A DNA stretch of 64,000 nt, from IMG/VR virus record IMGVR_UViG_3300021137_000001, positions 1-64,000 of that record; one strand, given 5' to 3'. The position numbers and the translations under genes are program-made. Positions within the stretch are counted from its first letter, which is position 1. Every line of letters starts with the position of its first letter. The notes under the pieces are model-generated. The model had not been told where the DNA came from, did not search any database, and saw only the letters and a list, made by a program, of their open reading frames with translations. Below, piece after piece: positions 20,484 through 51,707 of the stretch.

Positions 20484-21401
20484 ATGGCACAAACTCCAGA
20501 CAGCGTCTTAGTTAAAAGACCCTACCAATCAGAAACATTTACAGAAGAACAGCTCTTAGAATTTGCTAAGTGTGCTGACCCAATCACTGGGCCGGAATAC
20601 TTTATGAGTCATTACTTCTACATACAACATCCTACTAAAGGACGTATGTTGTATCAGCCGTTTGAATATCAAAAACGCTTAATTGAAACATATCACAATT
20701 ATAGATTCAGTATCAGTTTAATGCCACGTCAAACTGGTAAATCAACAAGTGCTGCCGGATACTTACTATGGTACGCAATGTTCGTACCCGATGCAACAAT
20801 TCTTATCGCGGCACACAAATATACAGGCTCGCAAGAAATTATGTCACGTATTCGTTACGCATATGAACTATGCCCTGACTTTATACGTGCTGGCGTAACA
20901 ACATACAACAAAGGTAATATCGATTTTGAAAATGGCTCACGTATTAACTCGGCTACAACGACAGAAAACACAGGTCGCGGTATGTCTATATCATTATTAT
21001 ATTGTGATGAGTTCGCATTTGTACGCAGTACAATCGGTCGTGAATTTTGGACTTCTATCAGTCCTACACTAGCAACAGGCGGTAAATGTATTATCACATC
21101 AACTCCTAACTCAGACGAAGATCAATTTGCTACTCTGTGGAAGGGAGCCAACAAATGCGTGGACGATTTTGGAAACGCCACTGCGTTAGGAGTTAATGGG
21201 TTTAAATCATTCCGTAGTTATTGGAGAGAACATCCAGATAGAGATGACACGTGGGCAACGGAACAACGTGCGCAATTAGGTGATGAACGCTTCCGTAGAG
21301 AGATGGATTGCTGTAACGGTGATACAATACTACAATTAGAAATTAATGATGAGCAAAAAATAGTCACAATTGGTGAATTGTTTAATATAATCGATAAATA
21401 A
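20484..21401 (+). CDS. terL: Terminase large subunit, N-terminal half (ATPase) fused to a 30-aa N-intein
   Basis: Walker A PRQTGKS, Walker B LYCDEFAF, ITSTPN; ends RREMD|CCNGDT...IIDK*. Confidence 0.92.
   Translation: MAQTPDSVLVKRPYQSETFTEEQLLEFAKCADPITGPEYFMSHYFYIQHPTKGRMLYQPFEYQKRLIETYHNYRFSISLMPRQTGKSTSAAGYLLWYAMFVPDATILIAAHKYTGSQEIMSRIRYAYELCPDFIRAGVTTYNKGNIDFENGSRINSATTTENTGRGMSISLLYCDEFAFVRSTIGREFWTSISPTLATGGKCIITSTPNSDEDQFATLWKGANKCVDDFGNATALGVNGFKSFRSYWREHPDRDDTWATEQRAQLGDERFRREMDCCNGDTILQLEINDEQKIVTIGELFNIIDK
21309..21398 (+). mobile_element. Split intein N-fragment (30 aa, atypically short)
   Basis: Begins with Cys in a block-A-like CCNGDTILQL, then KIVTIGELF, then stop. Confidence 0.85.
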
Positions 21402-22433
21402 TTGGAGAAGACCAATTTAATTGAGAAATGTATGAGTGATGCAAATTATGTAATATCGAAAATAGATAACAAAAACTATTGTGTATCTAACGGTCAGTTT
21501 ACAAAACATCTCAGAACAAATCAACTCACATATCAAGCATATTATGAAAAATATATAACAGGTACTATTAAATTATGTAGTTGTAGTAAACCATTGACCT
21601 TTTATCAAAAAAATCACACCTATGCTAGCAGTTGCGGAAACCCTGTATGTGTGGGTAAAACTATAGCTAAATCAAAACAATTATGGACAGACGAGCAGAA
21701 GCTATCGGATTCAGCAAACAAGAAAAAAGCTGCCAATGCTAAGACAGACAAACAGAAAGAGCTGCAAGTGGCTCGAGCCAGAGCAACTTTTATGCGCAAG
21801 TATGGAGTTGAATGGAGTTCTAAGTTTGCCGACCAAAAAGAAAAATCTAGAAAGACAAAGAAAGAAAAATATGGTAGCGAAACATATAATAATAGCAAGC
21901 AAACAAGCAATGCCTGGCAAGCAAAGACACTTGATGAAATTTCCAATATAGTATCTAAACGTCGTGCAACTTGTATGGATCGATTTGGGGTCGAAAATGC
22001 TTTAATGAAACCGGAAGCTAGAATAAATTCTGCTAAATCAAATAGTATAGGTCGAGCATTTGTTATGCCATCGGGTAAGGTTGTTGGGGTTCGTGGGTAC
22101 GAAGATACTGTGCTGGCCAACTTATTAAAAGAATACAGCGAATCAGAATTATTATTTGATGATAGGAAAACTATATATAGTTTACCGGTGTTTGCATATA
22201 TAAACGTAAACTTACACCTTGCAACATATTATCCGGATATCTATATTTCAAAAGAGAATAAAATCATCGAAGTAAAAAGCATGTGGTGGTGGAACGGAAA
22301 TGGTAATGAAAAATATAATTCTAGACTAATTAATAATTTACGGAAGAAAGATTCAGTAATAGAGCAAGGATACGAATACGAAGTTTGGTTGTTTAAAAAT
22401 AAAACAGAATATGAGATACTAGCATGGAAATAA
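21402..22433 (+). CDS. Free-standing PD-(D/E)xK-type homing endonuclease between the terL halves (start TTG 21402 or ATG near 21431)
   Basis: GYE...YYPDIYI...IIEVKS; KYG/RFGVEN repeats; Cys motifs. Confidence 0.7.
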   Translation: MEKTNLIEKCMSDANYVISKIDNKNYCVSNGQFTKHLRTNQLTYQAYYEKYITGTIKLCSCSKPLTFYQKNHTYASSCGNPVCVGKTIAKSKQLWTDEQKLSDSANKKKAANAKTDKQKELQVARARATFMRKYGVEWSSKFADQKEKSRKTKKEKYGSETYNNSKQTSNAWQAKTLDEISNIVSKRRATCMDRFGVENALMKPEARINSAKSNSIGRAFVMPSGKVVGVRGYEDTVLANLLKEYSESELLFDDRKTIYSLPVFAYINVNLHLATYYPDIYISKENKIIEVKSMWWWNGNGNEKYNSRLINNLRKKDSVIEQGYEYEVWLFKNKTEYEILAWK

Positions 22434-22765
22434 TGTATAAAGAAAACAAACACGGTTATAAAGTGTTAACTCCTGATGGATATAAATCCTTTGTAGGCAT
22501 TCGGTGTCTTGGCAAAAAAGAAATCCACCGGATTGAATTGGGTACTGACTATTGGATTGAGTGTACATCTAATCATAAGGTATTTGTTAGTGATACTATC
22601 AGAGTTACTGTTGATGAACTTGTAGTAGGAGATATAGTATTAACTAATAGTGGCAATCAACAAGTATCTGCTAAATTAAATTTAGGAAGAGAAGAATTAG
22701 TATACGATTTAATCGAAGTAGACGGTGGGCATCGTTATTATACAAATGGAATATTGTCGTCAAAT
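22424..22765 (+). mobile_element. Split intein C-fragment (114 aa) ending Ser-Asn, followed by Cys+1
   Basis: AAT at 22763-22765, TGT at 22766. Confidence 0.85.
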
Positions 22766-23506
22766 TGTGAATTTATCATCTGGGATGAAACACTTATTAA
22801 CCCAGGGCATTTAGTTGAAATGCAAGGTATTGACCCAATCGAACAGCAAGGACAAATACGTTGGTATAAAAAGCCAAATCCAGCATTTACATATCTCGTT
22901 GCACTTGACCCAAGTCTAGGCACAGGCGGCGACCCAGCGGCAATACAAATATTTGAACTCCCAAGTTTTATACAAGTAGGCGAGTGGCAACATAATCGCA
23001 CACCAGTACAACGTCAAATTGTTATACTAAGTGAGATTACTAAGTACCTTGCTGAAACTGTGCCAGTTAATAGCATATACTATAGCATGGAAAACAACTC
23101 TATCGGCGAAGCGGCATTAGTAACAGTAGCATCGATGGGCGAAGAAAACATTAAGGGAACATTCTTAAACGAACCACGCAAATCAAGTGGCGGAAGTTAT
23201 AGAAAGGGATTTAATACAACACAACGTTCTAAGCTATCTGCTTGCGCAAAGTTAAAAAACTTAATTGAATCTAAACGCTTAACAGTAAACAGTAAGAACT
23301 TAATCTCAGAACTAAAAACATTTGTTGCAAACGGCTCTAGCTTTGCTGCTAAACCCGGCGAAACAGATGACTTAGTAATGAGTGTAGTACTAATGGTACG
23401 CATGGCTATGCTATTGCAATCATACGATGCAAGTTTAGATAGTGCGATGCGTGATACGTTAGATGATTTCATCGAGCCTCTTCCCTGGATAATGACTACA
23501 TATTAG
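22424..23506 (+). CDS. terL: C-intein (114 aa) fused to the terminase large subunit C-terminal half (nuclease)
   Basis: Intein blocks B (CTSNH), F (VYDL) and G (YTNGILSSN|C); then CEFIIWDET, ALDPSLGTGGD, ENN and DDLVM. Confidence 0.9.
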   Translation: MEIMYKENKHGYKVLTPDGYKSFVGIRCLGKKEIHRIELGTDYWIECTSNHKVFVSDTIRVTVDELVVGDIVLTNSGNQQVSAKLNLGREELVYDLIEVDGGHRYYTNGILSSNCEFIIWDETLINPGHLVEMQGIDPIEQQGQIRWYKKPNPAFTYLVALDPSLGTGGDPAAIQIFELPSFIQVGEWQHNRTPVQRQIVILSEITKYLAETVPVNSIYYSMENNSIGEAALVTVASMGEENIKGTFLNEPRKSSGGSYRKGFNTTQRSKLSACAKLKNLIESKRLTVNSKNLISELKTFVANGSSFAAKPGETDDLVMSVVLMVRMAMLLQSYDASLDSAMRDTLDDFIEPLPWIMTTY

Positions 23507-23557
23507 ATTAGATGCCTTTCAACAGACTAGCATAAATAATACTATGAGAATAAAAAA

Positions 23558-25903
23558 ATGCGCGAAATAAACAAAATAGCTGAAGCATTGTTTGAAAAAA
23601 TCCGTGATAGATTTGATGATGTTACTTTAGGTGATGAAAACGCTAAAGCAACACAAGATCCAGCATCCGCACGTTTCTTCAACTTTGATTATACAGTAGA
23701 TGGCGCAAGCCACGGTAACATAACAATTAGCGTTATTGATGAAAATTCACTTAAAGTATACTTTAGTAAAAACATCAGTAGTGATTTAGACGATGAAGAA
23801 AAAGCAAAATGGTATGCGTTTTTACGTGAACTAAGAGAGTTTGCTCGTCGCAACTTATTAAGTTTCGACCCACGTGATATTACACGTAGTACACTAAAAC
23901 ACCGCGATTTGCAACAAGTAAGCAAATCAGACAATACATACAGTAAAGATGAAGTTGCACTTGGCGAAAGCAGAATGCACGGCACAAGTCGTAGTAGTTA
24001 CGAGCAAGATGGTGACGTAAAGATTATTGTACGTCATAGCGATCGAGTAGACCCAGAGCAACGTGGCGCACGTAGTCGTAAAATTAAAGCTCTGTTTATT
24101 GAAACAGCAGATGGCGCACGTATTAAACTACCCCACAACAACTTAAAATACGCACGTGCAATGGCACAACACATATCACAAGGTGGTGACGCTGGTGATG
24201 ATTTTGGGTGCCATATTACTAAAATAGCAGAAGAATGTGGTAAACTACGTCCGTTTAAATCAGCAATGATACGTAGAACATTTGAAGATGCTGAAACACA
24301 ATCAATGGCAGAAGCCGCATTTGAATATCACGGCTTGCTAAACAATACACTTAAAAAAATGGGTGGACGTAAAGGTTATGCTGCTTGTAAAGAAAGTTTT
24401 ATAGCAGATGATGTTTTAATGGATGAATTTGATGTTGATGCATTGCGTGAACGCTTTGTTAAACGATCATTTAATGATAGAATGGAAGACGCACTACCAC
24501 TTGTACAAAAGGCATATAATATGAAAAAATCTAATAACTTCGCGCAACAATTTGAAAGCTGGGCAGACAACGTAAGTGAAGGCACATGGGCTAAACCGGA
24601 AGGTGAAGAACAAGTTGCTGAACTTATCGACTTGTTGATGGAACCGCTAACAGTTGGTATTGATGCAACTAACGCAACTAGCGCACTATATAACTTAGTC
24701 GGTGATGACCAATTGTTTGATCGCTTAGGTGATTTAGCAGAAGAAAACCCAGAAGCTGATGCACGTGATGTGGTTATGGATTGGGTACAAGAAAACATGC
24801 CAGAAATTTATCAACAAGTTATGGCTGCAATTGGCGATGAAGATACAGCCGGTCAACAAGCAGAGCCAGAAATGGATGAAGGCGACACATATGGCGGCAC
24901 ACCGGCTGGTGGACAAGATTATACAAACGTTGAAGAAAACTACGACGATGAAGAAAATGATAGCTGCGATGCAGTACAAGCGGCAATTATTCGTCGTATC
25001 ATAAATTCACATAGTGATTTACTATCACAATACGGACCAGAAGCAATTACAAATGCATCTAGAGATGTTGCTGAATGGGTGGGTAACGTTGAAGAAATTG
25101 GTAGCAGTGATGTTAGCGGTTGGGTTAAAGAAGTTATTAACAACTTAGGCGGCACTGACGAAATTGAACTTGAACGTGACCGTGATGAACCAGAGCAAGA
25201 ATACGGTAGCGATATGCAGTTTGATCAAGACATCGACAGCCCAGACCAGTTTAATCGCGGTGGCGAAATGGATGAAGGCATAGTTGATACTGTTCGCGGT
25301 AAGAACTATAAACGTTTAGCAGATCGCAGTTTTAACAAGGCAATGAACGCACATGATGAGACTTTGAAATATGATTTTGATGACCCGTTCGGCCGCCCTC
25401 CACACGAAAAAGAATTTAGTAAACAAATGGCTAACATGCGTCAACGTGATAACAAAGCAAAATCACTTGGTATCGATGAAGCCACAGGTGCGTTAGATGC
25501 TATTATTGCTAATAACAAAGCGGCAGTTGATAATTTTATCCATCACAATGAATTAGATTATGATTTAGAAAGTGACTTACATGAATATTATTATGACAGA
25601 TTAAGTCATTCTGCACAACGTGATGCAGACGACGAAGGTGAAATTGCACAAATGTTTGCAGATGATTTGGCTGACATGGGTATGATGTCTAACGTTGACG
25701 AAGCAATTGGCGACGATTACGTAAACAAAGATGAAAAATTAAAACGTATGGGTGCGAAAGAATTAAGTCCGTTAGACAAAGCTAGAATTATGCCAAGCCA
25801 AATGAAAGCAATGTCTAAAGGCGACGACGAAGGCGACTTAACAGCATACAACAAACAATTTAATGAAGAAATCGCACAGATGCGCAGAATCGCTGGTATT
25901 TAA
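23558..25903 (+). CDS. Large acidic hypothetical virion protein
   Basis: 781-aa ORF after terL; late motif upstream; repeated xDE[GA] motifs. Confidence 0.6.
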   Translation: MREINKIAEALFEKIRDRFDDVTLGDENAKATQDPASARFFNFDYTVDGASHGNITISVIDENSLKVYFSKNISSDLDDEEKAKWYAFLRELREFARRNLLSFDPRDITRSTLKHRDLQQVSKSDNTYSKDEVALGESRMHGTSRSSYEQDGDVKIIVRHSDRVDPEQRGARSRKIKALFIETADGARIKLPHNNLKYARAMAQHISQGGDAGDDFGCHITKIAEECGKLRPFKSAMIRRTFEDAETQSMAEAAFEYHGLLNNTLKKMGGRKGYAACKESFIADDVLMDEFDVDALRERFVKRSFNDRMEDALPLVQKAYNMKKSNNFAQQFESWADNVSEGTWAKPEGEEQVAELIDLLMEPLTVGIDATNATSALYNLVGDDQLFDRLGDLAEENPEADARDVVMDWVQENMPEIYQQVMAAIGDEDTAGQQAEPEMDEGDTYGGTPAGGQDYTNVEENYDDEENDSCDAVQAAIIRRIINSHSDLLSQYGPEAITNASRDVAEWVGNVEEIGSSDVSGWVKEVINNLGGTDEIELERDRDEPEQEYGSDMQFDQDIDSPDQFNRGGEMDEGIVDTVRGKNYKRLADRSFNKAMNAHDETLKYDFDDPFGRPPHEKEFSKQMANMRQRDNKAKSLGIDEATGALDAIIANNKAAVDNFIHHNELDYDLESDLHEYYYDRLSHSAQRDADDEGEIAQMFADDLADMGMMSNVDEAIGDDYVNKDEKLKRMGAKELSPLDKARIMPSQMKAMSKGDDEGDLTAYNKQFNEEIAQMRRIAGI

Positions 25904-25923
25904 TACAAGAAATTAGTTTTACC

Positions 25924-25950
25924 AAAAGGGCACTTTTTAGTGCCTTTTTT
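25924..25950 (+). terminator. Rho-independent terminator
   Basis: AAAAGGGCACT-TTTT-AGTGCC followed by a T run. Confidence 0.75.
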
Positions 25951-25951
25951 C

Positions 25952-25980
25952 TTGACCTTACTATCAATATAACGTATTAT
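25952..25980 (+). promoter_or_regulatory. Sigma70-like promoter for ssb (late motif also present near 25995)
   Basis: TTGACC-17nt-TATTAT. Confidence 0.55.
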
Positions 25981-26063
25981 TAATGTGTAGGTGATAAATA
26001 GTATTGTAAGTAGCGGGAAGTTACCTACATTAAAGACCAACTTAAAACACAAGGAGTTATACC

Positions 26064-27077
26064 ATGGCAACATCATTAGCAGAAATCAGAGCAAAGTTAC
26101 AAGCGCAAGACACACGTAGTACAGGTAAATCATCAGGCGGCGGCGACAACGCAATCTACGCACATTGGAACATTGACGAAGGTGCAACGGCACGTATTCG
26201 TTTCTTACCAGATGCAGATCCAAAAAACACATTCTTCTGGGTTGAACGTAATATGATCAACTTAGAATTCGCTGGCGTTAAAGGTCAGACAGACAGCAAA
26301 AAAGTAGTAGTTCAAGTACCATGCGTTGAGATGTGGGGCGAAGCGTGTCCAATCTTAGCAGAAGTGCGCACATGGTTTAAAGATTCTTCATTAGAAGAAA
26401 TGGGCCGTAAGTATTGGAAAAAGAAATCATATTTGTTCCAGGGCTTTGTTCGTGAAAATCCAATGAAAGATGACAAGACCCCAGACAATCCAATTCGTCG
26501 TTTCATCATCAGTCCACAAATCTTTAACTTAGTTAAGTCAGCGTTACTTGACCCAGAGTTAGAAAACTTGCCAACTGATTATGCAGGCGGTTTAGATTTT
26601 ACTGCAACTAAAACATCTAAAGGTGGTTACGCAGACTATAGTACTAGTAAATGGTCACGTAAAGAATCTGCATTAACTGTAGACGAAGCTGAAGCAATTG
26701 AGAAACACGGTTTATATAATCTTGCAGACTTCTTGCCTAAACGTCCAACTGATGTTGATCTTAAAATCATGAAAGAAATGTTCGAAGCATCAGTTGATGG
26801 ACAACCATACGATGAAGAAAAATGGGGTGCGTATTACAAACCACGCGGTTCATTCACTTCTAATGCTCCGGCCACTAACACAGCACCGGCTGCGCAAGCA
26901 CCTGTAGCTACACCTGCTGCAACAGCAGTTGTTAGTGAGCATGTTGCTACAACAGACGTTCCATTTGAAGCAGATGATGCTCCAGAACCAACAGCGGCAG
27001 TAACAACTCCTGCTAGTGGCGGACAACGTGCTGAAGACATTTTAGCAATGATTCGTAATCGTCAAAAGACTGCGTAG
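26064..27077 (+). CDS. Single-stranded DNA-binding protein (gp32-like)
   Basis: IRFLP, PCPI-like ACPI, IISPQIF, YSTSKW; flexible acidic tail; upstream of uvsX. Confidence 0.8.
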   Translation: MATSLAEIRAKLQAQDTRSTGKSSGGGDNAIYAHWNIDEGATARIRFLPDADPKNTFFWVERNMINLEFAGVKGQTDSKKVVVQVPCVEMWGEACPILAEVRTWFKDSSLEEMGRKYWKKKSYLFQGFVRENPMKDDKTPDNPIRRFIISPQIFNLVKSALLDPELENLPTDYAGGLDFTATKTSKGGYADYSTSKWSRKESALTVDEAEAIEKHGLYNLADFLPKRPTDVDLKIMKEMFEASVDGQPYDEEKWGAYYKPRGSFTSNAPATNTAPAAQAPVATPAATAVVSEHVATTDVPFEADDAPEPTAAVTTPASGGQRAEDILAMIRNRQKTA

Positions 27078-27086
27078 GGAGTATAA

Positions 27087-31504: not shown

Positions 31505-33066
31505 TGTTTGACAATAGTAAGCCAAATATTATTTTATTAACAGATCACAGTGAGCCAATATTCATGCAGAAGTTGTTTGGGATTGCACGAGTTGCATCGG
31601 CCCTACGACAAGCAGGGTATCAGGTGGTTGTTATTAATCATTTGCATATATGGACTCCTGATGAACTTATGACTACACTTAGTCATTTAATTTCATCTCA
31701 CACATTGTTTGTAGGGTTTAATTCTATATTTTATCGTGATTTAGAAAATGTAATTACCCGAGACGATGGTCATATCGAGTGGCCGTTATGTAAACCTGGA
31801 TCTATGTTACCACATGCACACAGTCTGAATCGACGAGTAGTGCAGACTATTAAAACCGCAAATCCTAATTGTAAAATAGTATTGGGTGGTCCTGATGCTG
31901 CTGATGCTAGTTGGAATAAAGATTATGAGTATGTAGTATGTGGTTATGCAGATATGAGTATAGTTAATCTTGCAAATCATTTATTAAATGGCGAAAAACT
32001 TAATAAATCATATAGAAGCATTAATGGATTTATTATAATAAATGATAGTAAAGCAGATGGGTTTGATATAGCAACATCTAGGACATCGTACGAAACATAT
32101 GATGTAGTATTACCAGGAGAAACATTACCTATTGAGATTGCTCGTGGCTGCATATTCCAGTGTGCATTTTGTAGTTATCCATTAAATGGTAAAAAGAAAT
32201 TAGATTTTATTCGTAGTGAAGAATTCTTATATAATGAATTTTTAGAAAACTACGAAAAATATCAAGTAACTAGATATATATTCTCCGATGATACCTTTAA
32301 TGATAGCGTGGATAAAGTGCAGATGATGTATAATGTTTCAAAACGCTTGCCTTTTAAATTGGAATATTGGGCATATATAAGATTAGATTTAATCTCGGCC
32401 CATCCAGAAACAGCTGATTTACTGTTAGACAGTGGCATGCGTGGAGCCTACATGGGTATCGAATCGTGGAATAAAATCACCGGTGAAATCATTGGCAAGG
32501 GCATGGCTAAAGAAAAGCAACTTGCAACCTTACGATACCTTAAAGGTAAGTGGGGAAATCAAATAATGCTACACGGTTCTTTTATGGTTGGCTTACCGGA
32601 AGAAAGCGTAGAATCAGTAACTGACACCTTTAATACTTTAATGACTGATGATTCTCCACTTGATTCTTGGATATTTCGAGGATTTAACATGGAAGATAAA
32701 GCCGCCAAATCAAATGAATTTTACAGTAAGATAACATTAGATCCTAAGGGCTATGGATATCGAATATTAGGCAAACAAGATCATTTGCTAGCATGGGAAA
32801 ATGATTATATGGATTGGAAAAAAGCAACAGAACTTGCCAACCATTTTACATTGTCTGGCAGAACAGTTCGATCTGTTAAAATTGGAGGATTGGGATCATT
32901 TTCTATTGCTAGCCTTGGATTTGATTTAGAATTTTCGACAAATAAATATGTTTCAGACTTTGATTGGAATCAAGTTGATATGCGTAAACAACAGCGAGCA
33001 ACGGAATATAAACATAAATTTTTCAAAGAACTACGTATACCTATTGATATAGAACGAAAAGAATAA
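31504..33066 (+). CDS. Radical SAM protein with B12-binding-like N-terminus
   Basis: RGCIFQCAFC (CxxxCxxC), FSDDTF, MGIES, FMVGLP. Confidence 0.8.
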   Translation: MFDNSKPNIILLTDHSEPIFMQKLFGIARVASALRQAGYQVVVINHLHIWTPDELMTTLSHLISSHTLFVGFNSIFYRDLENVITRDDGHIEWPLCKPGSMLPHAHSLNRRVVQTIKTANPNCKIVLGGPDAADASWNKDYEYVVCGYADMSIVNLANHLLNGEKLNKSYRSINGFIIINDSKADGFDIATSRTSYETYDVVLPGETLPIEIARGCIFQCAFCSYPLNGKKKLDFIRSEEFLYNEFLENYEKYQVTRYIFSDDTFNDSVDKVQMMYNVSKRLPFKLEYWAYIRLDLISAHPETADLLLDSGMRGAYMGIESWNKITGEIIGKGMAKEKQLATLRYLKGKWGNQIMLHGSFMVGLPEESVESVTDTFNTLMTDDSPLDSWIFRGFNMEDKAAKSNEFYSKITLDPKGYGYRILGKQDHLLAWENDYMDWKKATELANHFTLSGRTVRSVKIGGLGSFSIASLGFDLEFSTNKYVSDFDWNQVDMRKQQRATEYKHKFFKELRIPIDIERKE

Positions 33067-33076
33067 TAAATACATT

Positions 33077-34234
33077 ATGCGCAAATTTATTGACCTCATT
33101 TTAGAAGCTGAATCTATTCTTAAACAACAAGTAGTTGATTTAGTACACCAAACCAACGATCCACAAATATTACACAAAGTACTATTAGCGTTAAAGTCTA
33201 CTGACTTAGGTGCAAAACTTAAACAAGTACTTAAACAGGATGTTGATGCTAACAAGATGGTAGATAAGTTGGCTAATTTAATTGTACATGTTGATGGTAC
33301 CGTTGAAGAAAAAGAAAAATTTGCAGACGAATATCCAAATGGCTTTGTTGATACTACTACGTTACTGAATGGTAAGAGAAATAGTTTTACTGATATCATT
33401 GAAGCTGGCTTCCCAGATCGAGTATTTCGTTTACTTGCAATTGAATTAACAGCACAGGGTGTTGGACCAGGGGAAATTGCACTAGCAATACTAAGTCCTA
33501 AGATTAAACATAGTGGCCGTGCAAGTGGTGGCGGCGATTTGAATATTGATGGTAAGGCAGTTGAAGTTAAGACTACAGTAAGCAAAGGTGGCCGCTGGAG
33601 CGACGCACGTAAAGCTAATTTAAACATGCGAGCTATTAGAGATGCAATTGCTGAAATAGTAGTAGCAAACGGTATTGAAATGCCAGCACGAGTAGGGATT
33701 ACGTTTTGGGTTAATACAGTACGTCCTTTGATACAGGATGATTCGACAGCACTCGACAAAGTAACAACAATTATGGCCGATGGATTGTTTTCACATGTTA
33801 ATAACTCAGAGTATAAAGAATCACTACAAACTGGTGACGCCGGTGCCATCAAAGAAGCAGTATTGAGTACAGGATATGATAATTATAAAAAATATGCTGG
33901 ATTTGATGGTATGCTATTGCTAGATGTGCGCGGCGGTGGATCTGCGCAGTATTTTGAAACATACGACGATATGCGCGGTCAAATTAATGCGTCGACTATC
34001 TATCTAATGGCACCAGAATCAGAGGCTATGCCACAAATAGTATTGTCAACTTCGTCAAATGGTGCAGAACAATTTACAGGAATTGCGCCCCAATCCAGTA
34101 AAGAAACAGCAGATGCAATACGTAAGCAAGTAGATAACATAACTGCACCAACTACAGGACTTAGACCACCCGGAACAGTGACAGCTCCACGTGCTCAGAG
34201 GACAGTATCAGACATACCAAGAGAAAAACGATAG
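33077..34234 (+). CDS. Late protein with putative PD-(D/E)xK nuclease domain
   Basis: GVGPGE...GDLNIDGKAVEVK; N-terminus MRKFIDLILE; TAAATA at 33067. Confidence 0.5.
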   Translation: MRKFIDLILEAESILKQQVVDLVHQTNDPQILHKVLLALKSTDLGAKLKQVLKQDVDANKMVDKLANLIVHVDGTVEEKEKFADEYPNGFVDTTTLLNGKRNSFTDIIEAGFPDRVFRLLAIELTAQGVGPGEIALAILSPKIKHSGRASGGGDLNIDGKAVEVKTTVSKGGRWSDARKANLNMRAIRDAIAEIVVANGIEMPARVGITFWVNTVRPLIQDDSTALDKVTTIMADGLFSHVNNSEYKESLQTGDAGAIKEAVLSTGYDNYKKYAGFDGMLLLDVRGGGSAQYFETYDDMRGQINASTIYLMAPESEAMPQIVLSTSSNGAEQFTGIAPQSSKETADAIRKQVDNITAPTTGLRPPGTVTAPRAQRTVSDIPREKR

Positions 34235-43319: not shown

Positions 43320-43320
43320 A

Positions 43321-43650: not shown

Positions 43651-43651
43651 C

Positions 43652-45228: not shown

Positions 45229-45232
45229 TAAA

Positions 45233-45727: not shown

Positions 45728-45751
45728 ACTACTATTTAAGGTAGATTTAGG

Positions 45752-45780
45752 TTGACAAAATATTATTTTGGCTGTATAAT
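45752..45780 (+). promoter_or_regulatory. Consensus early promoter
   Basis: TTGACA-17nt-TATAAT with TG extension. Confidence 0.85.
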
Positions 45781-45812
45781 GCTATACATACACTAACAAC
45801 AAGGAGCAACAA

Positions 45813-45977
45813 ATGACTAAACTTATTATTATTTTTATCTGCCTTAATTTAACTGCTTGCGGGTGGGACCAGAAGAAATGTGTAGATGGAAAGTTATACC
45901 ACAAGCCCTACGGAAATGGACCGTACCTACTCGAAAACGGTATCACTTGCCTACCTGAAGATAAGGAAACAAAATGA
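45813..45977 (+). CDS. Small lipoprotein (54 aa)
   Basis: MTK plus hydrophobic stretch and lipobox LTA|C; AAGGAG RBS; translated by hand. Confidence 0.65.
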   Translation: MTKLIIIFICLNLTACGWDQKKCVDGKLYHKPYGNGPYLLENGITCLPEDKETK

Positions 45978-46261
45978 AAAACTTAGCACAGTATATTGAA
46001 CAGAAAAATACTTGGGCAATTTTTTTTAAAAGCCCAACTTATGATGTTAATAACTTATCAGAACGTGATTGTCAAAATCTGTACGATAGTTTAGACAATG
46101 ACCTAAGCCCAGAGAACTTAACTTGTGACGGCGAACTTAGCGGAGCAAACATTCGCGGTCGCGCACGTTTATTGAACTCAGCGGCAAAAGAGTTAGTTAC
46201 GATAATTCGTGCTAACAACTACACAATCCCCTACTCCGACTTCCGCGAACTTAATTTTTAA
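45974..46261 (+). CDS. Hypothetical early protein
   Basis: LSPENLTCDGE motif; coupled to the lipoprotein gene. Confidence 0.6.
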   Translation: MKNLAQYIEQKNTWAIFFKSPTYDVNNLSERDCQNLYDSLDNDLSPENLTCDGELSGANIRGRARLLNSAAKELVTIIRANNYTIPYSDFRELNF

Positions 46262-46265
46262 TCAC

Positions 46266-46294
46266 TTGACTTTTTGGTAAAATGGCTGTATAAT
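46266..46294 (+). promoter_or_regulatory. Early promoter
   Basis: TTGACT-17nt-TATAAT with TG. Confidence 0.8.
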
Positions 46295-46326
46295 AGCACT
46301 TATACACTAAAGCAACGGAGCACAAG

Positions 46327-46758
46327 ATGACATACACATTTGATGAGAACGTAGTTAGCGACTTACACAAAGATGCACGTGGTTCACGTCCAAATGAATA
46401 CTTTTGGGAAGAATGGTATAACATCAATGATGAAGGTAAACAGTCAATATGGGATGGCTTGCTTGTGGAACTTGACGTTACTGATAAGGAAGAACAAGCT
46501 CGCGAACAATCAGCAATTGCTAGTTTTGAACGGCACATTGCTTCATTGGAATCAATTAGCAACTCACGTGAACAATCAATCAGATGGATTCTTGAAGGCT
46601 TAGAACTTACTGAATCAGACAAACTATATGGTAGTGATTACATTTGCTACAAATTGGGTCTACCATACAGTTACGCTACACAATTTGATCTAGCAAGTGT
46701 GCGCAACGACGCAGACATATATGCGGATTTAGATGCTATTGCATATGGCAACAAATAG
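46327..46758 (+). CDS. Hypothetical early protein
   Basis: SDLHKDARGSRP motif; GGAG RBS. Confidence 0.6.
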   Translation: MTYTFDENVVSDLHKDARGSRPNEYFWEEWYNINDEGKQSIWDGLLVELDVTDKEEQAREQSAIASFERHIASLESISNSREQSIRWILEGLELTESDKLYGSDYICYKLGLPYSYATQFDLASVRNDADIYADLDAIAYGNK

Positions 46759-46759
46759 G

Positions 46760-46788
46760 TTGACAGAACAGAAAATAGACTGTATAAT
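46760..46788 (+). promoter_or_regulatory. Early promoter
   Basis: TTGACA-17nt-TATAAT with TG. Confidence 0.85.
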
Positions 46789-46850
46789 AGCTACATAATA
46801 AGAAAACAGATAACTGTTTCAAAATTATAAAATTATTTAAGGAGCATTAA

Positions 46851-47873
46851 ATGACTGGTTTTGTTAAAATTAAAAGTGGTACTTACAGAAACGCTAAAGT
46901 AGAAAACGAAGTGTTTCCGCTTGTTAAACAATATACTGTTGGTGCTAAAGGTGGCTTTATTACTGTTGATGGTACAGGACAGTTTGGTAAGGATAAAGTA
47001 CGTGTGTTAGTAGATGGTGTAACAGACTTTGAGTTTGTACACGCAGACGAATATACAGGTACTGTTAGCACAGCAACAAAAACTTCAGCAGTAACGTCAA
47101 CAGATGAAGAACGTATTACGCAAATTGCAGAACGTTTTGAAATCTTAGATGACATGACTAAGGCAACATTGAATGGTGACATTCGTGCGCTGATTGTAAG
47201 TGGCCCTCCGGGTGTTGGTAAATCTTTTACAGTTGAACGTGAACTTGAACGTTCTGCACTGTTTGATCAAATTAGCGGACGTCGTGTAAAAAGTACTATT
47301 GTTAAAGGTAGTGCAACAGCTATTGGCTTGTACAAAACATTGTATGAGTTTAGTGATAGCAACTGCGTAATTGTATTTGATGACTGTGATAGCATCTTGT
47401 TTGATGAAGTGAGTTTGAACTTGCTTAAAGGTGCATTGGACAGTGGTAAAAATCGTAAGATTAGCTGGTTAGCTGAATCACGTGTATTGAAAAATGAAGG
47501 CATTCCAAATAGCTTTACATTTCACGGTAGCGTAATTTTTATTACAAACTTGAAATTTGATCAAGTACGTAGTCAAAAGATGAAAGATCACTTAGAAGCA
47601 TTGCAATCACGTTGTCATTACTTAGATTTGACACTTGATACAATGCGTGATAAGATTTTGCGTATCAAACAAATTGCCGATACTGGTGTGTTGTTTGCAG
47701 ACTACGATTTTGAACAATGCGCACAAGATGAGATTATTAACTTCTTGAACGTAAACAAAAACAAAATGCGTGAAATGAGTTTGCGTATGGCAATTAAAGT
47801 AGCAGAGCTACGTAAGAGCTTTCCGACAAAATGGCAGGCACTTGCTTCAACAACTTGTATGAAAGCAGGTTAA
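46851..47873 (+). CDS. AAA+ ATPase
   Basis: Walker A GPPGVGKS, Walker B IVFDDCD, ITN, SRC arginine finger. Confidence 0.8.
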   Translation: MTGFVKIKSGTYRNAKVENEVFPLVKQYTVGAKGGFITVDGTGQFGKDKVRVLVDGVTDFEFVHADEYTGTVSTATKTSAVTSTDEERITQIAERFEILDDMTKATLNGDIRALIVSGPPGVGKSFTVERELERSALFDQISGRRVKSTIVKGSATAIGLYKTLYEFSDSNCVIVFDDCDSILFDEVSLNLLKGALDSGKNRKISWLAESRVLKNEGIPNSFTFHGSVIFITNLKFDQVRSQKMKDHLEALQSRCHYLDLTLDTMRDKILRIKQIADTGVLFADYDFEQCAQDEIINFLNVNKNKMREMSLRMAIKVAELRKSFPTKWQALASTTCMKAG

Positions 47874-48139
47874 TGCGACATCGCAAGCGTAGAGTCTTAG
47901 AGGGTAGCTGGTTTAACTTAAACAGTGTAACCAGCCCCGCAACAGGTCGTAAGCACTATGTGGTCAGTGCTAATGCCTACAGACTATTAAAGTTAGAAGG
48001 CATGAACATAGACGATGTGCGTGATCACTTTGACCCACATCATAATAGAGGTAGTAAGCACAGTACTTCGTGGAAGTTTAGAAGCCGTGAACAAGCAGAA
48101 CAATTACTTACAATGGCAATATTAAAGTTCGGAGGATAA
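47873..48139 (+). CDS. Hypothetical protein
   Basis: TAATG coupling. Confidence 0.5.
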   Translation: MRHRKRRVLEGSWFNLNSVTSPATGRKHYVVSANAYRLLKLEGMNIDDVRDHFDPHHNRGSKHSTSWKFRSREQAEQLLTMAILKFGG

Positions 48140-48140
48140 G

Positions 48141-48515
48141 ATGGCTACTGGATACGCTCACGCAACAATTGAACGGCAGTTTCTAGCAGAAACAATACGT
48201 AAAGCAAAGTACGCGGCAAAGACAACTAGGAATCTTGCTTTCCTAGTTGACTTGGACTATGTTATTGGTTTACTAAAAGCGCAGTCCGGCAAGTGTGCGA
48301 TTACAGGTTGGGATTTAGAATTTACACGCGGCGGGACCTTCAAGGGAAGTATGAATCCTCGAGGTTGCACGATGGATAGAATTGATAACGACAAAGGTTA
48401 TATTCGAGGTAATATTCAATTGACCTGTGTGTTGCCTAATATGATTCGGGGAACAATGTCGTTGGAGTCATTTAAATCTTTGTGCAATGATGTAGTTGCA
48501 CATACAGGAAAATAA
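48141..48515 (+). CDS. HNH/endonuclease VII-like protein
   Basis: CAITG...DRIDNDKGYIRGNIQLTC. Confidence 0.65.
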   Translation: MATGYAHATIERQFLAETIRKAKYAAKTTRNLAFLVDLDYVIGLLKAQSGKCAITGWDLEFTRGGTFKGSMNPRGCTMDRIDNDKGYIRGNIQLTCVLPNMIRGTMSLESFKSLCNDVVAHTGK

Positions 48516-48516
48516 G

Positions 48517-48624
48517 ATGGACAACAACACAGCCGCACTATTATTACTTGCTGGTACAGCTTATTTGGTAGGTTGGTGCGGCTGGAGTGCTTGGTGGTTT
48601 TTGTTTGCAGTATTATTGATGTAA
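48517..48624 (+). CDS. 35-aa hydrophobic membrane peptide
   Basis: MDNNTAALLLLAGTAYLVGWCGWSAWWFLFAVLLM; translated by hand. Confidence 0.45.
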   Translation: MDNNTAALLLLAGTAYLVGWCGWSAWWFLFAVLLM

Positions 48625-48668
48625 TAGCTTTCACTGTGTCGCATGTATGCTCCTGACACAGTGACCTC

Positions 48669-48703
48669 AAAGCCCGATGTTTAATCGCATTGGGCTTTTT
48701 TTT
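48669..48703 (+). terminator. Rho-independent terminator
   Basis: AAAGCCCGATG...CATTGGGC followed by a T run. Confidence 0.75.
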
Positions 48704-48708
48704 ATCGG

Positions 48709-48737
48709 TTGCTCTCTATAACTTAATCGCGTATAAT
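48709..48737 (+). promoter_or_regulatory. Sigma70-like promoter
   Basis: TTGCTC-17nt-TATAAT; ATG follows 5 nt later. Confidence 0.6.
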
Positions 48738-48742
48738 AAACT

Positions 48743-49870
48743 ATGACCTATAAATTCATCGAAGATTTTTTAGAAATAATGGCTGGTTACGATAACAATA
48801 TCGCACCAAACATATTTCACGTTGCTAACTACACCCCAACTATTAGCCTTGCTCGTTACGACCATACAATAGTTGAGAGCATGGGCGCACATACACGTTA
48901 TGGTGGCGCACTAACTGATAAGCAAGCTGACTTGGCTGTACGCCTAGTGCTTAAATATCGTAAGCAATTTACTAAACTTGGTATTGATGTAACGCCAGCC
49001 GAGAACCCACAGTATCGCAGACCAGTGCGCATTATTAACAGAGCAAAACGTGTATGGTTAGATGATGAACGTATTGCTATGCGCTTCCCATACGACATGG
49101 CGATTATTAAAGAAGTGCAGACATACAGAAATCAAAGTCAAGGGCGCATGAAGTTTGATAGCGAAGATAAGATATGGTATCTAGCATTAACAGAATCAAA
49201 CATCTGTTGGGCAGTTGCATTTAGCGAACTATATAACTTTGAAGTCGATGAGCTTGTACAAAACTTAAACACACTAATCACAACATGCGAAGCAGAACTG
49301 TATGAGATTAAACTTGTATATGATGCGGTGCATGGCTTTAAGATTACTAACGCGGCTGATAGTTTAATTGAATACATCAATACTAACTTAGGTGGGTTTG
49401 GTCTCGACAATGCAGTTGCACTAATTGATAATGCAAGTGTGCTAGGTTATACGTATGACGAAATGATTATACACCCTGCACTATTAGATGTGTTTAATAT
49501 GCGTCGTAACATACATCTACCAACTACAGCAAGTGCCCTTACGCTTGTTTTAGACTATGCAGAGCTAACTAATCGCTACCCTGTATGTATATACGACCCA
49601 TCAATGACATCAACGGATATGGATTTAAGCAGGTTTAGTGAAAGCGAAATTGTACGCTTTAATCATAGTGGTAAAACAAAGACTTGCGATTATAACATAG
49701 ATTGTGTTAAAGTAGTATATGCAAACAAGATACCAACGACATGGGAGTATCCAGTGCCGTTACTTATATCAACTGCTGAGATGATGTTTGGTGGTAAACG
49801 GATGGAATGGATTAATCGAGCAGAGAAGATTGTTTACTATACCAATGTTAAATTGAGAGAAGCTGATTAA
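48743..49870 (+). CDS. Hypothetical protein upstream of uvsW
   Basis: 375-aa ORF. Confidence 0.65.
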   Translation: MTYKFIEDFLEIMAGYDNNIAPNIFHVANYTPTISLARYDHTIVESMGAHTRYGGALTDKQADLAVRLVLKYRKQFTKLGIDVTPAENPQYRRPVRIINRAKRVWLDDERIAMRFPYDMAIIKEVQTYRNQSQGRMKFDSEDKIWYLALTESNICWAVAFSELYNFEVDELVQNLNTLITTCEAELYEIKLVYDAVHGFKITNAADSLIEYINTNLGGFGLDNAVALIDNASVLGYTYDEMIIHPALLDVFNMRRNIHLPTTASALTLVLDYAELTNRYPVCIYDPSMTSTDMDLSRFSESEIVRFNHSGKTKTCDYNIDCVKVVYANKIPTTWEYPVPLLISTAEMMFGGKRMEWINRAEKIVYYTNVKLREAD

Positions 49871-50664
49871 TGGCAACAAAAATTTTAGTAGTCGGATGTT
49901 CGTTTTCAAATGGTCATGGGCTCAATGATCAGGACAATGGCGATTGTAATAAATCTGATCCAAAACTTTGGGTTAATCAGGTATGCAATAAAGTTTGGCC
50001 TAATTCAGACATAACTAATCTTGCGAAAACTGGAGCAAATAATAATTGGATATTCTTTGAAACTATAAGCGCATTATTATTAAATGAATATGATATTGTT
50101 TTAGTAGAATGGACGGCGATACCTAGATTCAATATTAAAGTAGGATTAGAATTGTACACCGTTGAATCAATGTTAAATTCAGAATCAATTGATATTAATA
50201 TTAATAACAATATAACTTATACCAGTAAATGGCTAAACTCATTAGGTGATAATTTACGAAAAATACATAACGATCATTGGGATATTTTAGATCTTGTCAA
50301 ATATATAAATGTCATATTGCAAATACACAAAGGAAAAACATTTTTTATCAATGGGTTGGCTCCGTGGCCAGATCAATATTTTACTAAGAAAAAAATTCAG
50401 TATCCATCTGAATTATCAAATTTTGAACAAAATATGTTTGCTATAAGTACCAGAGATGACGATGAAATATTTGCTCTTTATGAAATGGTACATAATCAAT
50501 ATCAACAATATGGAGGAGTACGTCAAGAGCATTGGTTAAATTTATATAGCTCATTGATGTCGATGCAAGTTGATTATATAAGCGATACAGATCTGCACCC
50601 AGGTTACAAAAGTCAAGATATATTTGCAGAATATTTAATATCACAACTAAGAGAAAATAATTAA
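49870..50664 (+). CDS. SGNH/GDSL hydrolase-like accessory protein
   Basis: LVVGCSFSNG at the N-terminus, DLHPG at the C-terminus; AT-rich. Confidence 0.55.
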   Translation: MATKILVVGCSFSNGHGLNDQDNGDCNKSDPKLWVNQVCNKVWPNSDITNLAKTGANNNWIFFETISALLLNEYDIVLVEWTAIPRFNIKVGLELYTVESMLNSESIDININNNITYTSKWLNSLGDNLRKIHNDHWDILDLVKYINVILQIHKGKTFFINGLAPWPDQYFTKKKIQYPSELSNFEQNMFAISTRDDDEIFALYEMVHNQYQQYGGVRQEHWLNLYSSLMSMQVDYISDTDLHPGYKSQDIFAEYLISQLRENN

Positions 50665-51680
50665 TGGCACTAGCTAGACTGATAATCAAAGATGAAGTTA
50701 ATGTAAAGATCGAAGGACTAGACTTACATGAACGCAAAGAACTCAGCAACATGTTCAAGTATGAAATTCCGGGCGCACGTTATCTACCAAGTGTACGTCT
50801 TGGTCGTTGGGATGGCAAGATTGCTTACTTTCAGTTAGGTGGTAGCACGTACACTAACTTGCTTGCTGAGATATTACCATACTTAGATGAGCGTGGGTAT
50901 AACATTGAGTTGGAAGATTTACGTGACTATAGAACACAGTTTAGTTTTGCGCAGGTAACAGAACAAACATTCGCACACAAAGTATGGCCAGCTAAACATC
51001 CGATTGCGGGCCAGCCAGTTGTGCTACGAGATTATCAAATTGAAATCATTAACAAGTTTCTTGAGAACCCACAGTGCATACAAGAAATTGCAACTGGCGC
51101 AGGTAAGACATTAATTACTGCGGCACTAAGTTATAGCTGTGAACAATACGGTCGTACTGTAGTAATCGTACCAAACAAATCACTTGTTACACAAACAGAA
51201 GCAGACTACATTAACTTGGGACTAGACGTTGGTGTTTACTTTGGTGACAGAAAAGAATATGGACGTACACATACAATATGTACATGGCAAAGTCTTAACA
51301 TTATGCTTAAGAACACTAAGTCAGCAGAAGCCGATGTTACTATAATGGAATTTTTAGAAGGTGTTGTATGCGTTATGGTCGACGAATGTTTTGATAGTGA
51401 TAGTAAGGTATTAACTCCGACTGGATATGTGGCTATTAAAAATATAAAAGCTGGTGACAAAGTAATTAACTATTCGGAAAATACTAAAGAATTTAAGATA
51501 GATACTGTAGTTAAACAACATATAAATTTAACTAATTCGTCTAGCGAAAAAATGTATGAGCTAACCTTTGATAATGGAGTATCTATCCGTGTAACTGGCA
51601 ATCATAAATTTTTAACTAATTTGGGTTGGTGCAGGGCCGACGAATTATCAGATAACCATGAAATTGTAAATAAAACATAA
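50664..51680 (+). CDS. uvsW: UvsW SF2 helicase N-terminal half fused to a 97-aa N-intein
   Basis: LRDYQ, ATGAGKT, VIVPNKSLVTQ, TWQS, VMVDE|CFDSDS...TGNH...NKT*. Confidence 0.9.
   Translation: MALARLIIKDEVNVKIEGLDLHERKELSNMFKYEIPGARYLPSVRLGRWDGKIAYFQLGGSTYTNLLAEILPYLDERGYNIELEDLRDYRTQFSFAQVTEQTFAHKVWPAKHPIAGQPVVLRDYQIEIINKFLENPQCIQEIATGAGKTLITAALSYSCEQYGRTVVIVPNKSLVTQTEADYINLGLDVGVYFGDRKEYGRTHTICTWQSLNIMLKNTKSAEADVTIMEFLEGVVCVMVDECFDSDSKVLTPTGYVAIKNIKAGDKVINYSENTKEFKIDTVVKQHINLTNSSSEKMYELTFDNGVSIRVTGNHKFLTNLGWCRADELSDNHEIVNKT
51387..51677 (+). mobile_element. Split intein N-fragment (97 aa)
   Basis: Block A CFDSDSKVLT, block B VTGNHKF. Confidence 0.88.
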
Positions 51681-51707
51681 ATACATATAACTAATGCAGA
51701 AGTCCTT

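What the first reader, a model, noticed from the sequence alone, without database searches (positions are those of the whole stretch)
21395..51685. In both fractured genes the splitting stop codon is part of the late promoter
Seen: the IntN stops are GA-TAAATA at 21399 (terL) and CA-TAAATA at 51678 (uvsW), so the TAA is the first half of the late motif. Each endonuclease stop overlaps the IntC start (22424-22433; 52597-52610). Inference: an invading endonuclease that brings its own late promoter would itself create the stop that splits the intein and would couple the C-half to its own translation. That is a simple route to split inteins and a way to make the endonuclease hard to lose.
Basis: partly seen in the sequence, partly recalled or inferred. 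Interest (0 to 1): 0.65.

Follow-up and report, generated by a model that had tools for sequence, protein, structure and literature searches.

The report
Split terL and uvsW genes, endonuclease inserts
Two essential genes of a freshwater giant phage are each broken inside an intein by a selfish endonuclease gene, and the first half ends in that gene's late promoter; this is a good example of the published "fractured gene" arrangement, not a new mechanism.

Summary
[quoted passage not shown] Each HEG stop overlaps the IntC start.

ATAAATA is the most upstream-enriched 7-mer in this 329-kb phage, which encodes a gp55-type late sigma. It is very likely a late promoter, but no RNA data exist.

The uvsW IntN stop is the first half of CATAAATA, as claimed. 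The terL stop is not. Its frame is GAT AAA TAA, so it uses only the last two bases of GATAAATA.

Stop/motif overlap is rare in this genome: 10 of 429 genes, 9 of 78 promoter-led junctions. The uvsW junction is conserved in relatives whose HEGs are only 51-70% identical.

It is not a rule. Sister lineages read through the motif and stop 15 nt later, lose motif and stop together, or have no promoter at all (S16, PM2, phiR1-RT, SG1, JK32).

An ORF reading into a promoter-led insert should stop in the motif about half the time.

Dassa et al. 2009 already proposed that the HEG's 5' end supplies the stop and its 3' end the start.

"Hard to lose" is contradicted by four independent HEG-loss alleles. 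One re-fuses the intein into a single ORF.

The parts
20484..21308 (+). terL N-extein (T4-type terminase ATPase part)
   Evidence: Pfam Terminase_6N 7e-16. Intein-less relatives match residues 1-276 and then continue directly with the C-extein. Boundary.
21309..21401 (+). terL IntN, 30 aa starting with Cys1, plus stop TAA 21399-21401. An atypically short N fragment.
   Evidence: Block B (TSNH) lies in the C piece.
21393..21400 (+). Late-promoter-type motif GATAAATA, 31 nt before the HEG ATG. Its last two bases are the first two of the IntN stop.
   Evidence: Same register in L114 (AATAAATAA). L044 has a one-mismatch version (GATGAATAA).
21432..22433 (+). Free-standing HEG of terL (333 aa; DUF7487; PD..EVK motif at residues 268-282)
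   Evidence: Pfam PF24308 2e-31. phrog_3339 'homing endonuclease'. Start confirmed by homologs. Weak PD-(D/E)XK fold matches. Motif.
22424..22765 (+). terL IntC, 114 aa (blocks B, F, G; ends ..SSN). Its ATG lies 10 nt inside the HEG 3' end (overlap 22424-22433).
   Evidence: Pfam Intein_splicing.
22766..23506 (+). terL C-extein, starting with the +1 Cys (CEFIIW..)
   Evidence: Intein-less relatives align from residue 114.
48669..48742 (+). Context: a strong terminator (48669-48698), then a sigma-70-type promoter (TTGCTC-17-TATAAT) 5 nt before the ATG at 48743. This heads the operon that contains uvsW.
50664..51386 (+). uvsW N-extein, ending at ..VDE of helicase motif II
   Evidence: Pfam UvsW_N, ResIII, DEAD. 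Boundary.
51387..51680 (+). uvsW IntN, 97 aa (Cys1; block B TGNH), plus stop TAA 51678-51680
   Evidence: Pfam Intein_splicing/PT-HINT..
51676..51683 (+). Late-promoter-type motif CATAAATA, 24 nt before the HEG ATG. Its TAA is the IntN stop. It is the only ATAAATA in the operon 48743-53436.
   Evidence: Conserved in all Type A relatives.
51708..52610 (+). Free-standing HEG of uvsW (300 aa; TnsA/Vsr-like PD-(D/E)XK domain, residues 155-300; D..EVK at 224-237)
   Evidence: phrog_22417 6e-43 and phrog_15427 'endonuclease' 8e-23. Model pLDDT 81. TnsA Z 7.9, Vsr Z 6.0, I-Bth0305I Z 5.3.
52597..52701 (+). uvsW IntC, 35 aa (ends ..VVSN). Its ATG lies 14 nt inside the HEG 3' end (overlap 52597-52610).
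52702..53436 (+). uvsW C-extein, starting with the +1 Cys (CH of the DECH box)
   Evidence: Pfam Helicase_C..

Best explanation
Both loci are 'fractured genes' in the sense of Dassa et al. 2009. The phage is a T4-related freshwater jumbo phage (329 kb, direct terminal repeats).

terL is interrupted at the ATPase ..D|C.. site by an atypical split intein (30 + 114 aa). uvsW is interrupted in the DE|CH box by a canonical split intein (97 + 35 aa). In each, a free-standing PD-(D/E)XK homing endonuclease gene sits at the intein break.

Each HEG carries its own gp55-type late promoter (NATAAATA) 24-31 nt before its ATG. Its last codons overlap the IntC start.

IntN ends in the promoter because the intein reading frame runs into the HEG cassette and stops at the first in-frame stop. 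The motif offers one in one frame always (xNA TAA ATA), and in a second frame when the next base is A or G (NAT AAA TAR). The third frame (ATA AAT A..) reads through.

The whole unit IntN-promoter-HEG-IntC moves by homing.

Shown: the anatomy, motif enrichment, conservation of the junction, the homing tract, and the alternative states in relatives.

Inferred: that the motif fires late, that IntC is translationally coupled, that the inteins trans-splice, and that the stop was historically supplied by the insert.
For: Anatomy and domains.

Promoter status:
- ATAAATA is the top upstream-enriched 7-mer. 79 of 126 copies lie in the 4.6% of sequence within 70 nt upstream of starts.
- A gp55-type late sigma is present (phrog_12791, 4e-79).

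Junction conservation:
- The motif is kept whether it is non-coding plus stop (Type A) or coding I-N-T (Type B), with the same 24-nt spacing to the ATG.
- Three registers occur in terL lineages.

Frame expectation: an ORF that reads into the motif should stop in it 0.49 of the time.

IntN reaches the motif in 5 of 6 HEG junction classes, against 9 of 76 ordinary promoter-led junctions (Fisher p 4e-4).

Homing:
- 51393-52718 is about 100% identical in phages whose exteins are 70-85% identical and whose outer flanks do not align.
- A lake contig equals exactly that segment.
- Another lake contig is a precise intein-less allele, 51386 joined to 52705.

The model itself is published: PMC2677866.
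Against: - No transcript data. No RNA run holds the locus, so late firing is untested.
- Unlike 15 of 16 loci in Dassa et al., no significant RBS-sequestering hairpin spans the promoter (z -0.5 and +0.3).
- The junction classes share ancestry, so the Fisher test overstates independence.
- A T4 gp45 clamp homolog was not detected by sequence.
- The direction of the founding event (HEG into a contiguous intein) is not shown. The only contiguous allele found is derived.
Confidence: 0.8

Rival explanations
1. Selected interlock. The 8-bp motif is kept as both IntN terminator and HEG promoter because the dual use protects the HEG. Any mutation that kills the promoter also removes the stop, and vice versa.
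For: - The Type A junction (..NKT, TAA in CATAAATA) persists across HEGs down to 51% identity.
- In Type A, and in the window's terL, IntN and the HEG are in the same frame with only that one stop between them.
- L136 lost the motif (ATAAGTA) and the stop (TAA to GAA) together and became an IntN-HEG fusion.
Against: - L083 kept the stop (TAG) while that same substitution destroyed the motif.
- L134 and L093 keep the stop with a decayed motif.
- Type B separates motif and stop by 15 nt.
- T-even relatives need no promoter.
- Four HEG-loss alleles exist.
- Frame chance alone predicts about 49% overlap.
Confidence: 0.12
2. Pure coincidence of AT-rich sequence. TAA stops next to A/T-rich codons often spell TAAATA, with no functional promoter at these sites.
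For: - PM2 has AAATAAATATA at its uvsW IntN stop, but this lies inside the HEG ORF, where it cannot serve as the HEG promoter. S16 has AAATAAAAATA at the same place.
- The codons I-N-K (ATA AAT AAA) create a second motif 11 nt upstream in several lineages.
- 17 of 429 stops overlap TAAATA.
Against: - The exact 7-mer is 14-fold enriched upstream of starts.
- It is the best conserved block of the junction in both coding and non-coding registers, with fixed spacing to the ATG.
- p = 5e-4 to 0.012 for both loci.
Confidence: 0.05
3. Fission from an in-frame IntN-HEG fusion. The ancestor resembled JK32/TB34 or L136 (host N part + IntN + HEG in one ORF). A later mutation created the stop, and with it a promoter, freeing the HEG.
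For: - Fusion forms exist for both genes.
- In the window both IntN ORFs are in frame with their HEG, with a single stop between.
Against: - The in-frame relation is not conserved in terL lineages (L114, L112, L076, L044, L083) or in part of Type B. Chance for two loci is 1/9.
- L136 is nested as sister of L128, which has a stop and promoter, so it looks derived.
Confidence: 0.1

Closest known systems
Fractured genes (Dassa, London, Stoddard, Schueler-Furman, Pietrokovski 2009, NAR 37:2560; PMC2677866)
   Same: [quoted passage not shown]
- A T4-type late promoter element upstream of the HEG.
- The HEG 3' end overlaps the downstream start.
- Their model states that the stop of the upstream gene comes from the 5' end of the invader and the Met of the downstream gene from its 3' end.
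- Their HEG-less derivative keeps the upstream element (their gp41-7; here L074/75).
   Different: - No significant RBS-sequestering hairpin here.
- The stop physically overlaps the promoter hexamer, a detail not found in the passages of that paper that were read.
- The host genes are uvsW and terL, with a DUF7487 HEG.
- A re-fusion to a contiguous mini-intein by deletion (L121-124) is not a step drawn in their model.
Atypical natural split inteins of terL (AceL-TerL 25+104 aa, GOS-TerL 37+115, Cat-TerL 30+104; reviewed in PMC11766414)
   Same: Same host gene. A very short IntN (30 aa here) and a long IntC (114 aa) that carries block B. Cys1 and Cys+1.
   Different: Sequence homology to those inteins was not tested, because no reference sequence was available in the tools. 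The source here is a temperate freshwater phage, not the Ace Lake or GOS samples.
Aeh1 nrdA/mobE genes-in-pieces (Gibb and Edgell; Friedrich et al.; as cited in PMC2677866)
   Same: A free-standing HEG splits an essential T4-like phage gene. HEG expression is tied to a late promoter. The HEG coding sequence overlaps the downstream piece.
   Different: There is no intein in Aeh1, where the halves assemble non-covalently. In Aeh1 the late promoter sits in a hairpin that masks the RBS, which is not seen here.
Unannotated fractured uvsW/terL in cultured Straboviridae (S16 gp114/114.1/115, PM2, phiR1-RT g166-168, SG1, JK32, TB34)
   Same: The same intein sites (DE|CH in uvsW; IDE|C..HN|CAF in terL). 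A homologous uvsW intein. The HEG family of the window's uvsW insert (37-44% identity).
   Different: No late promoter at the junction. The HEG ATG overlaps the IntN end by 10-14 nt, or IntN is fused in frame to the HEG.

Membership tests
Fractured gene (split intein + free-standing HEG) | One host gene appears as two adjacent same-strand ORFs whose ends are intein halves (Cys1/block A-B; block F-G with terminal Asn and a +1 nucleophile). | tested here: met
   Pfam intein/Hint hits on both N and C pieces. Cys1, TxxH..SN|C read directly. Intein-less relatives join exactly at these points.
Fractured gene (split intein + free-standing HEG) | A separate endonuclease ORF lies between the halves. 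| tested here: met
   DUF7487 / phrog 'homing endonuclease' and a TnsA/Vsr-like PD-(D/E)XK domain. The homing footprint is a 100%-identity tract bounded by the intein ends.
Fractured gene (split intein + free-standing HEG) | The HEG 3' coding end overlaps the downstream start. | tested here: met
   10-nt and 14-nt overlaps. Conserved in relatives.
Fractured gene (split intein + free-standing HEG) | A hairpin in the HEG 5' UTR holds the late promoter and masks the RBS (15 of 16 published loci). | tested here: not met
   Folds are no better than shuffles: z -0.49 (terL) and +0.33 (uvsW). terL has only a weak AAUUGG/CCAAUU stem.
Fractured gene (split intein + free-standing HEG) | Protein trans-splicing restores the host protein. 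| not testable with these tools
   Needs expression of the two halves.
T4-type (gp55) late promoter | A TATAAATA-like -10 element with no -35 element. | tested here: met
   GATAAATA and CATAAATA match 7 of 8 positions. Genome-wide only the 7-mer carries information.
T4-type (gp55) late promoter | The genome encodes the late sigma, and the motif is concentrated upstream of genes. | tested here: met
   phrog_12791 4e-79 and phrog_234 8e-23. 79 of 126 motif copies lie in upstream zones.
T4-type (gp55) late promoter | Transcripts start about 6-8 nt downstream, late in infection. | not testable with these tools
   No RNA run holds the sequence.
T4-type (gp55) late promoter | A sliding-clamp (gp45) co-activator is present. 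| tested here: inconclusive
   T4 gp45 found nothing in the genome at E<=1. A divergent clamp would be missed.
Atypical terL split intein (AceL/GOS/Cat-TerL type) | IntN of about 25-37 aa that lacks block B, and an IntC of more than 100 aa, in terL. | tested here: met
   30 + 114 aa, with TSNH in IntC.
Atypical terL split intein (AceL/GOS/Cat-TerL type) | Sequence homology to the named inteins. | not tested
   No reference sequence was available through the tools. Lengths are taken from PMC11766414.
Vsr-like / EDxHD homing endonucleases (I-Bth0305I) | A Vsr/TnsA-like PD-(D/E)XK catalytic fold. | tested here: inconclusive
   TnsA Z 7.9, Vsr Z 6.0, I-Bth0305I Z 5.3, NGO0050 Z 5.2 over residues 155-300. 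The Z values are middling. There was no sequence hit to the PDB.
Vsr-like / EDxHD homing endonucleases (I-Bth0305I) | The EDxHD signature. | tested here: not met
   Neither HEG contains an ED.HD string. The motifs are VDF..EVK and PD..EVK.

The most novel reading that the evidence does not exclude
The promoter/stop module may act as a selected toggle. Because IntN and the HEG are in frame with only the promoter's TAA between them, decay of the motif converts a free-standing, late-transcribed HEG into an IntN-HEG fusion (as in L136, and in JK32). Microhomology deletions convert the fractured gene back into a contiguous mini-intein (L121-124). Fracture would then be a reversible, interconvertible state and not a one-way step toward split inteins.
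Probability: 0.2. Interest if true: 0.5.

Novelty: new member of a known kind. Interest (0 to 1): 0.3.

Why it matters
The finding gives no new mechanism. It does give a well-sampled natural series for a model that was proposed from 26 short metagenomic loci.

In one family of lake phages, all of these states can be seen:
- the fractured state with the stop in the promoter;
- the fractured state with the stop 15 nt after the promoter;
- an in-frame IntN-HEG fusion;
- HEG-less split alleles that keep the HEG's two ends;
- a re-fused contiguous mini-intein that still carries the last 17 HEG codons in its linker;
- precise intein-less alleles;
- a clean homing tract.

This is useful for intein and HEG evolution. 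It also yields new natural split inteins: an atypical 30+114 terL intein and a 97+35 uvsW intein. Finally, it flags unannotated fractured uvsW/terL genes in cultured Salmonella, Proteus, Yersinia and Escherichia phages, where the model can be tested at the bench.

Tried and rejected
- Megablast of the terL locus against GenBank phages: no match.
- Search for paralogs of either HEG in the 329-kb genome: none. This removes any within-genome test of whether the HEG carries its promoter elsewhere.
- Other inteins in the genome: only these two.
- RBS-masking hairpins of the Aeh1/Dassa type: not significant.
- Terminators inside the loci: none on the + strand, so read-through transcripts are expected.
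- RNA evidence: no RNA run holds the locus. The DNA contigs laid cannot show transcript starts.
- PDB sequence searches with either HEG, and with a 14-sequence profile: nothing.
- T4 gp45 search: nothing.
- Free-standing DUF7487 homologs in Vibrio phages Va1 and SRILMA sit behind a terminator after the capsid gene, without an exact ATAAATA. They do not show whether the promoter travels with the HEG.
- The in-frame relation of IntN and HEG was considered as evidence for fission of a fusion protein. It was rejected as weak, because it is not conserved among relatives.
- L121-124 were first misread by my script as 'no HEG, stop after ..EWK'. They are a single 625-aa ORF.
Full report
**What the window is**

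The window is the first 64 kb of a 329,321-bp virus record with direct terminal repeats, GC 37%. It carries T4-type tail sheath and tube genes, a gp32-like SSB, terL and uvsW. The genome encodes a gp55-type late sigma (phrog_12791, 4e-79). Identical or near-identical DNA occurs in many freshwater lake metagenomes.

**Check of the observation**

terL:
- The N piece is 20484-21401, the HEG is 21432-22433 and the C piece is 22424-23506.
- The N piece reads ..ATC GAT AAA TAA. Its stop (21399-21401) is the last TA of GATAAATA (21393-21400) plus the next A.

uvsW:
- The N piece is 50664-51680, the HEG is 51708-52610 and the C piece is 52597-53436.

Both overlaps between the HEG stop and the IntC start are as stated: 10 nt at 22424-22433 and 14 nt at 52597-52610.

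**Anatomy**

terL:
- The N-extein ends at ..EMD.
- IntN is 30 aa starting at Cys (nt 21309).
- IntC is 114 aa. It carries block B (TSNH), block F, and ..SSN followed by Cys+1 at nt 22766.
- This is the atypical short-IntN layout known from AceL-, GOS- and Cat-TerL (lengths in PMC11766414). Homology to those inteins was not tested.

uvsW:
- The intein sits in the DE|CH box.
- IntN is 97 aa starting at nt 51387, with block B TGNH.
- IntC is 35 aa ending ..VVSN, with Cys+1 at nt 52702.

The endonucleases:
- The terL HEG is DUF7487 (2e-31) with an invariant PD..EVK motif. Its fold matches are weak, and all are to PD-(D/E)XK nucleases.
- The uvsW HEG has a C-terminal domain whose best structural matches are TnsA (Z 7.9), Vsr (Z 6.0), Hjc, I-Bth0305I (Z 5.3) and NGO0050. 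It lacks the EDxHD signature.

**Is ATAAATA a promoter in this genome?**

- It is the single most upstream-enriched 7-mer. 79 of 126 copies lie within 70 nt upstream of a start, a zone that is 4.6% of the sequence. That is stronger enrichment than for Shine-Dalgarno words or the TTGACA/TATAAT words.
- Only the 7-mer itself carries information. G is slightly preferred just before it, and there is no -35 element.
- Together with the gp55 homolog, this is the T4 late-promoter pattern.
- No RNA run holds the locus, so firing remains inferred.

**Chance**

- 10 of 429 stops overlap ATAAATA.
- Among 78 motif copies upstream of genes, 67 lie after the preceding stop (median gap 53 nt), 9 overlap it and 2 lie inside the upstream ORF.
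- Both fractured genes belong to the rare overlapping class (p 5e-4 or 0.012, depending on the baseline).

**Relatives of the uvsW locus**

- Type A junctions have an IntN tail ..NKT with the TAA inside CATAAATA. They occur in lineages whose HEGs are 51-100% identical to the window's.
- Type B junctions have a homologous promoter and leader with the same spacing to the ATG. One extra base upstream puts the motif in frame ATA AAT ACA, so IntN reads through it as ..INT.. and ends at a conserved AACTAA 15 nt later.
- In the distant L102, TATAAATA lies inside IntN and the stop follows 5 nt after it.
- The block CATAAATACA..CTAA.GC is the best conserved part of the junction. Conservation in both coding and non-coding registers argues for selection on the DNA element itself.
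- Decay is also seen:
  - L093 has G-TAAATA.
  - L134 has ATAAGTA with the stop retained.
  - L136 has ATAAGTA and TAA changed to GAA. There IntN is fused in frame to the HEG.

**Relatives of the terL locus**

- Most relatives have no intein.
- With the same HEG family:
  - L114 has AATAAATAA in the window's register, with a homologous leader.
  - L044 has GATGAATAA, the same register with one mismatch.
  - L076-79 have the TAA as the first half of CATAAATA.
  - L112/113 have GT-TAAATA.
  - L083 has TAG-ATAAGTA. Aligned to L076, the base difference that makes its stop TAG instead of TAA is also what breaks the motif.
- L007 and L021 carry a small HNH HEG with GATAAATA 16-26 nt after a TAG stop.
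- L073 has no HEG and a 14-nt spacer.

**Cultured T4-like phages**

- S16 and PM2 have the same uvsW intein and a homolog of the window's uvsW HEG. The HEG ATG lies inside the last IntN codons and there is no usable promoter. The ATAAATA at the PM2 stop lies inside the HEG ORF.
- phiR1-RT and SG1 have terL fractured at the same site by that HEG family. The overlap is 14 nt and there is no ATAAATA within -200 to +100.
- In JK32 and TB34 the terL N part, IntN and the HEG form one ORF.

**What moves**

- Four other phage contigs carry 51393-52718 at about 100% identity. Their uvsW exteins are 70-85% identical and their outer flanks do not align.
- The tract starts within 6 nt of Cys1 and ends 17-68 nt past the +1 codon.
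- A lake contig equals exactly this segment. Another joins 51386 to 52705 with GTA in between, which is a precise intein-less allele reading DE-V-H (low depth).
- The mobile unit is therefore the whole composite, not the HEG alone.

**Loss of the HEG**

- L074/75 are L076 with an internal deletion of about 881 bp. They keep the stop and promoter, plus about 115 nt of the HEG 3' end with the IntC ATG.
- L179 has an intein identical to that of L159. It lost the IntN tail, the promoter and most of the HEG. It gained a new TAG stop and keeps about 200 nt of the HEG 3' end.
- L121-124 are a single 625-aa ORF with a contiguous mini-intein.
  - Read in the HEG frame, its 11-aa linker spells the last 17 codons of an L095-type HEG.
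  - The junction shows TCACG microhomology.
  - In an intein tree these alleles are sister to L095/L099 (support 100/99) and are nested among fractured alleles.
  - They are therefore re-fusions by deletion, not ancestors.
- The endonuclease is thus lost repeatedly. What survives each time is a working stop and start, or a restored reading frame.

**Interpretation**

An ORF that reads into a cassette beginning with NATAAATA meets a stop in the motif in one frame always. It meets one in a second frame when the next base is A or G, which is the case for 47% of motif copies. The expected overlap is 0.49. The observed registers fit this passive picture: two stop-giving frames and one read-through frame, all present among relatives.

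IntN reaches the motif in 5 of 6 junction classes, against 9 of 76 ordinary junctions. This is the footprint expected of an insertion into an ORF, or of strong compaction at the break. The classes are not fully independent.

The published model says this in general form.

**Differences from the published loci**

- No significant RBS-masking hairpin.
- Different host genes and a different HEG family.
- A re-fusion route to a contiguous mini-intein that is not drawn in the published model.

**Verdict**

This is a real feature that is largely already explained. It is a new member of a known kind and of modest interest.

Noticed in passing
Whole genome; e.g. window 33065-33079 and 48731-48745: About 14 late motifs sit exactly 5 nt before an ATG (20 sit within 0-7 nt). 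The sigma-70-type TATAAT at 48732-48737 is also 5 nt before the ATG at 48743. Transcripts from these promoters would be leaderless or nearly so.
   Followed up: partly
L074-L079 (terL relatives), locus coordinates about 2000-3500: These terL genes carry one or two further intein-like inserts in the N-terminal half. Matches to the IntC query interrupt the terN match.
   Followed up: no
L101 coordinates 893-2400: The uvsW N-extein is interrupted by about 1.5 kb between query residues 150 and 149. This looks like a second insertion (another HEG or intein) in the same gene.
   Followed up: no
L103 (Salmonella phage S16), L105 (Proteus phage PM2), L106 (phiR1-RT), L107 (SG1), L104 (JK32), L108 (TB34): Cultured Straboviridae carry fractured uvsW or terL with split inteins. 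They are annotated only as two 'DNA helicase' or 'terminase' CDS plus a hypothetical protein or endonuclease. PHROGs even has families made of the N fragments (phrog_5989, phrog_16259).
   Followed up: partly
window 51386/52705 in run X5: A low-depth lake contig is a precise intein-less uvsW allele with Val in place of the +1 Cys (DEVH box). It may be an allele that cannot host the intein.
   Followed up: no
window 51690: The only polymorphism inside the homing tract is A/G in the HEG leader. It is shared by several phage backgrounds and by the X19 contig.
   Followed up: no
G000 whole genome: T4 gp45 (the sliding clamp and late-transcription co-activator) finds no homolog at E<=1, although a gp55-type sigma is present.
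   Followed up: no
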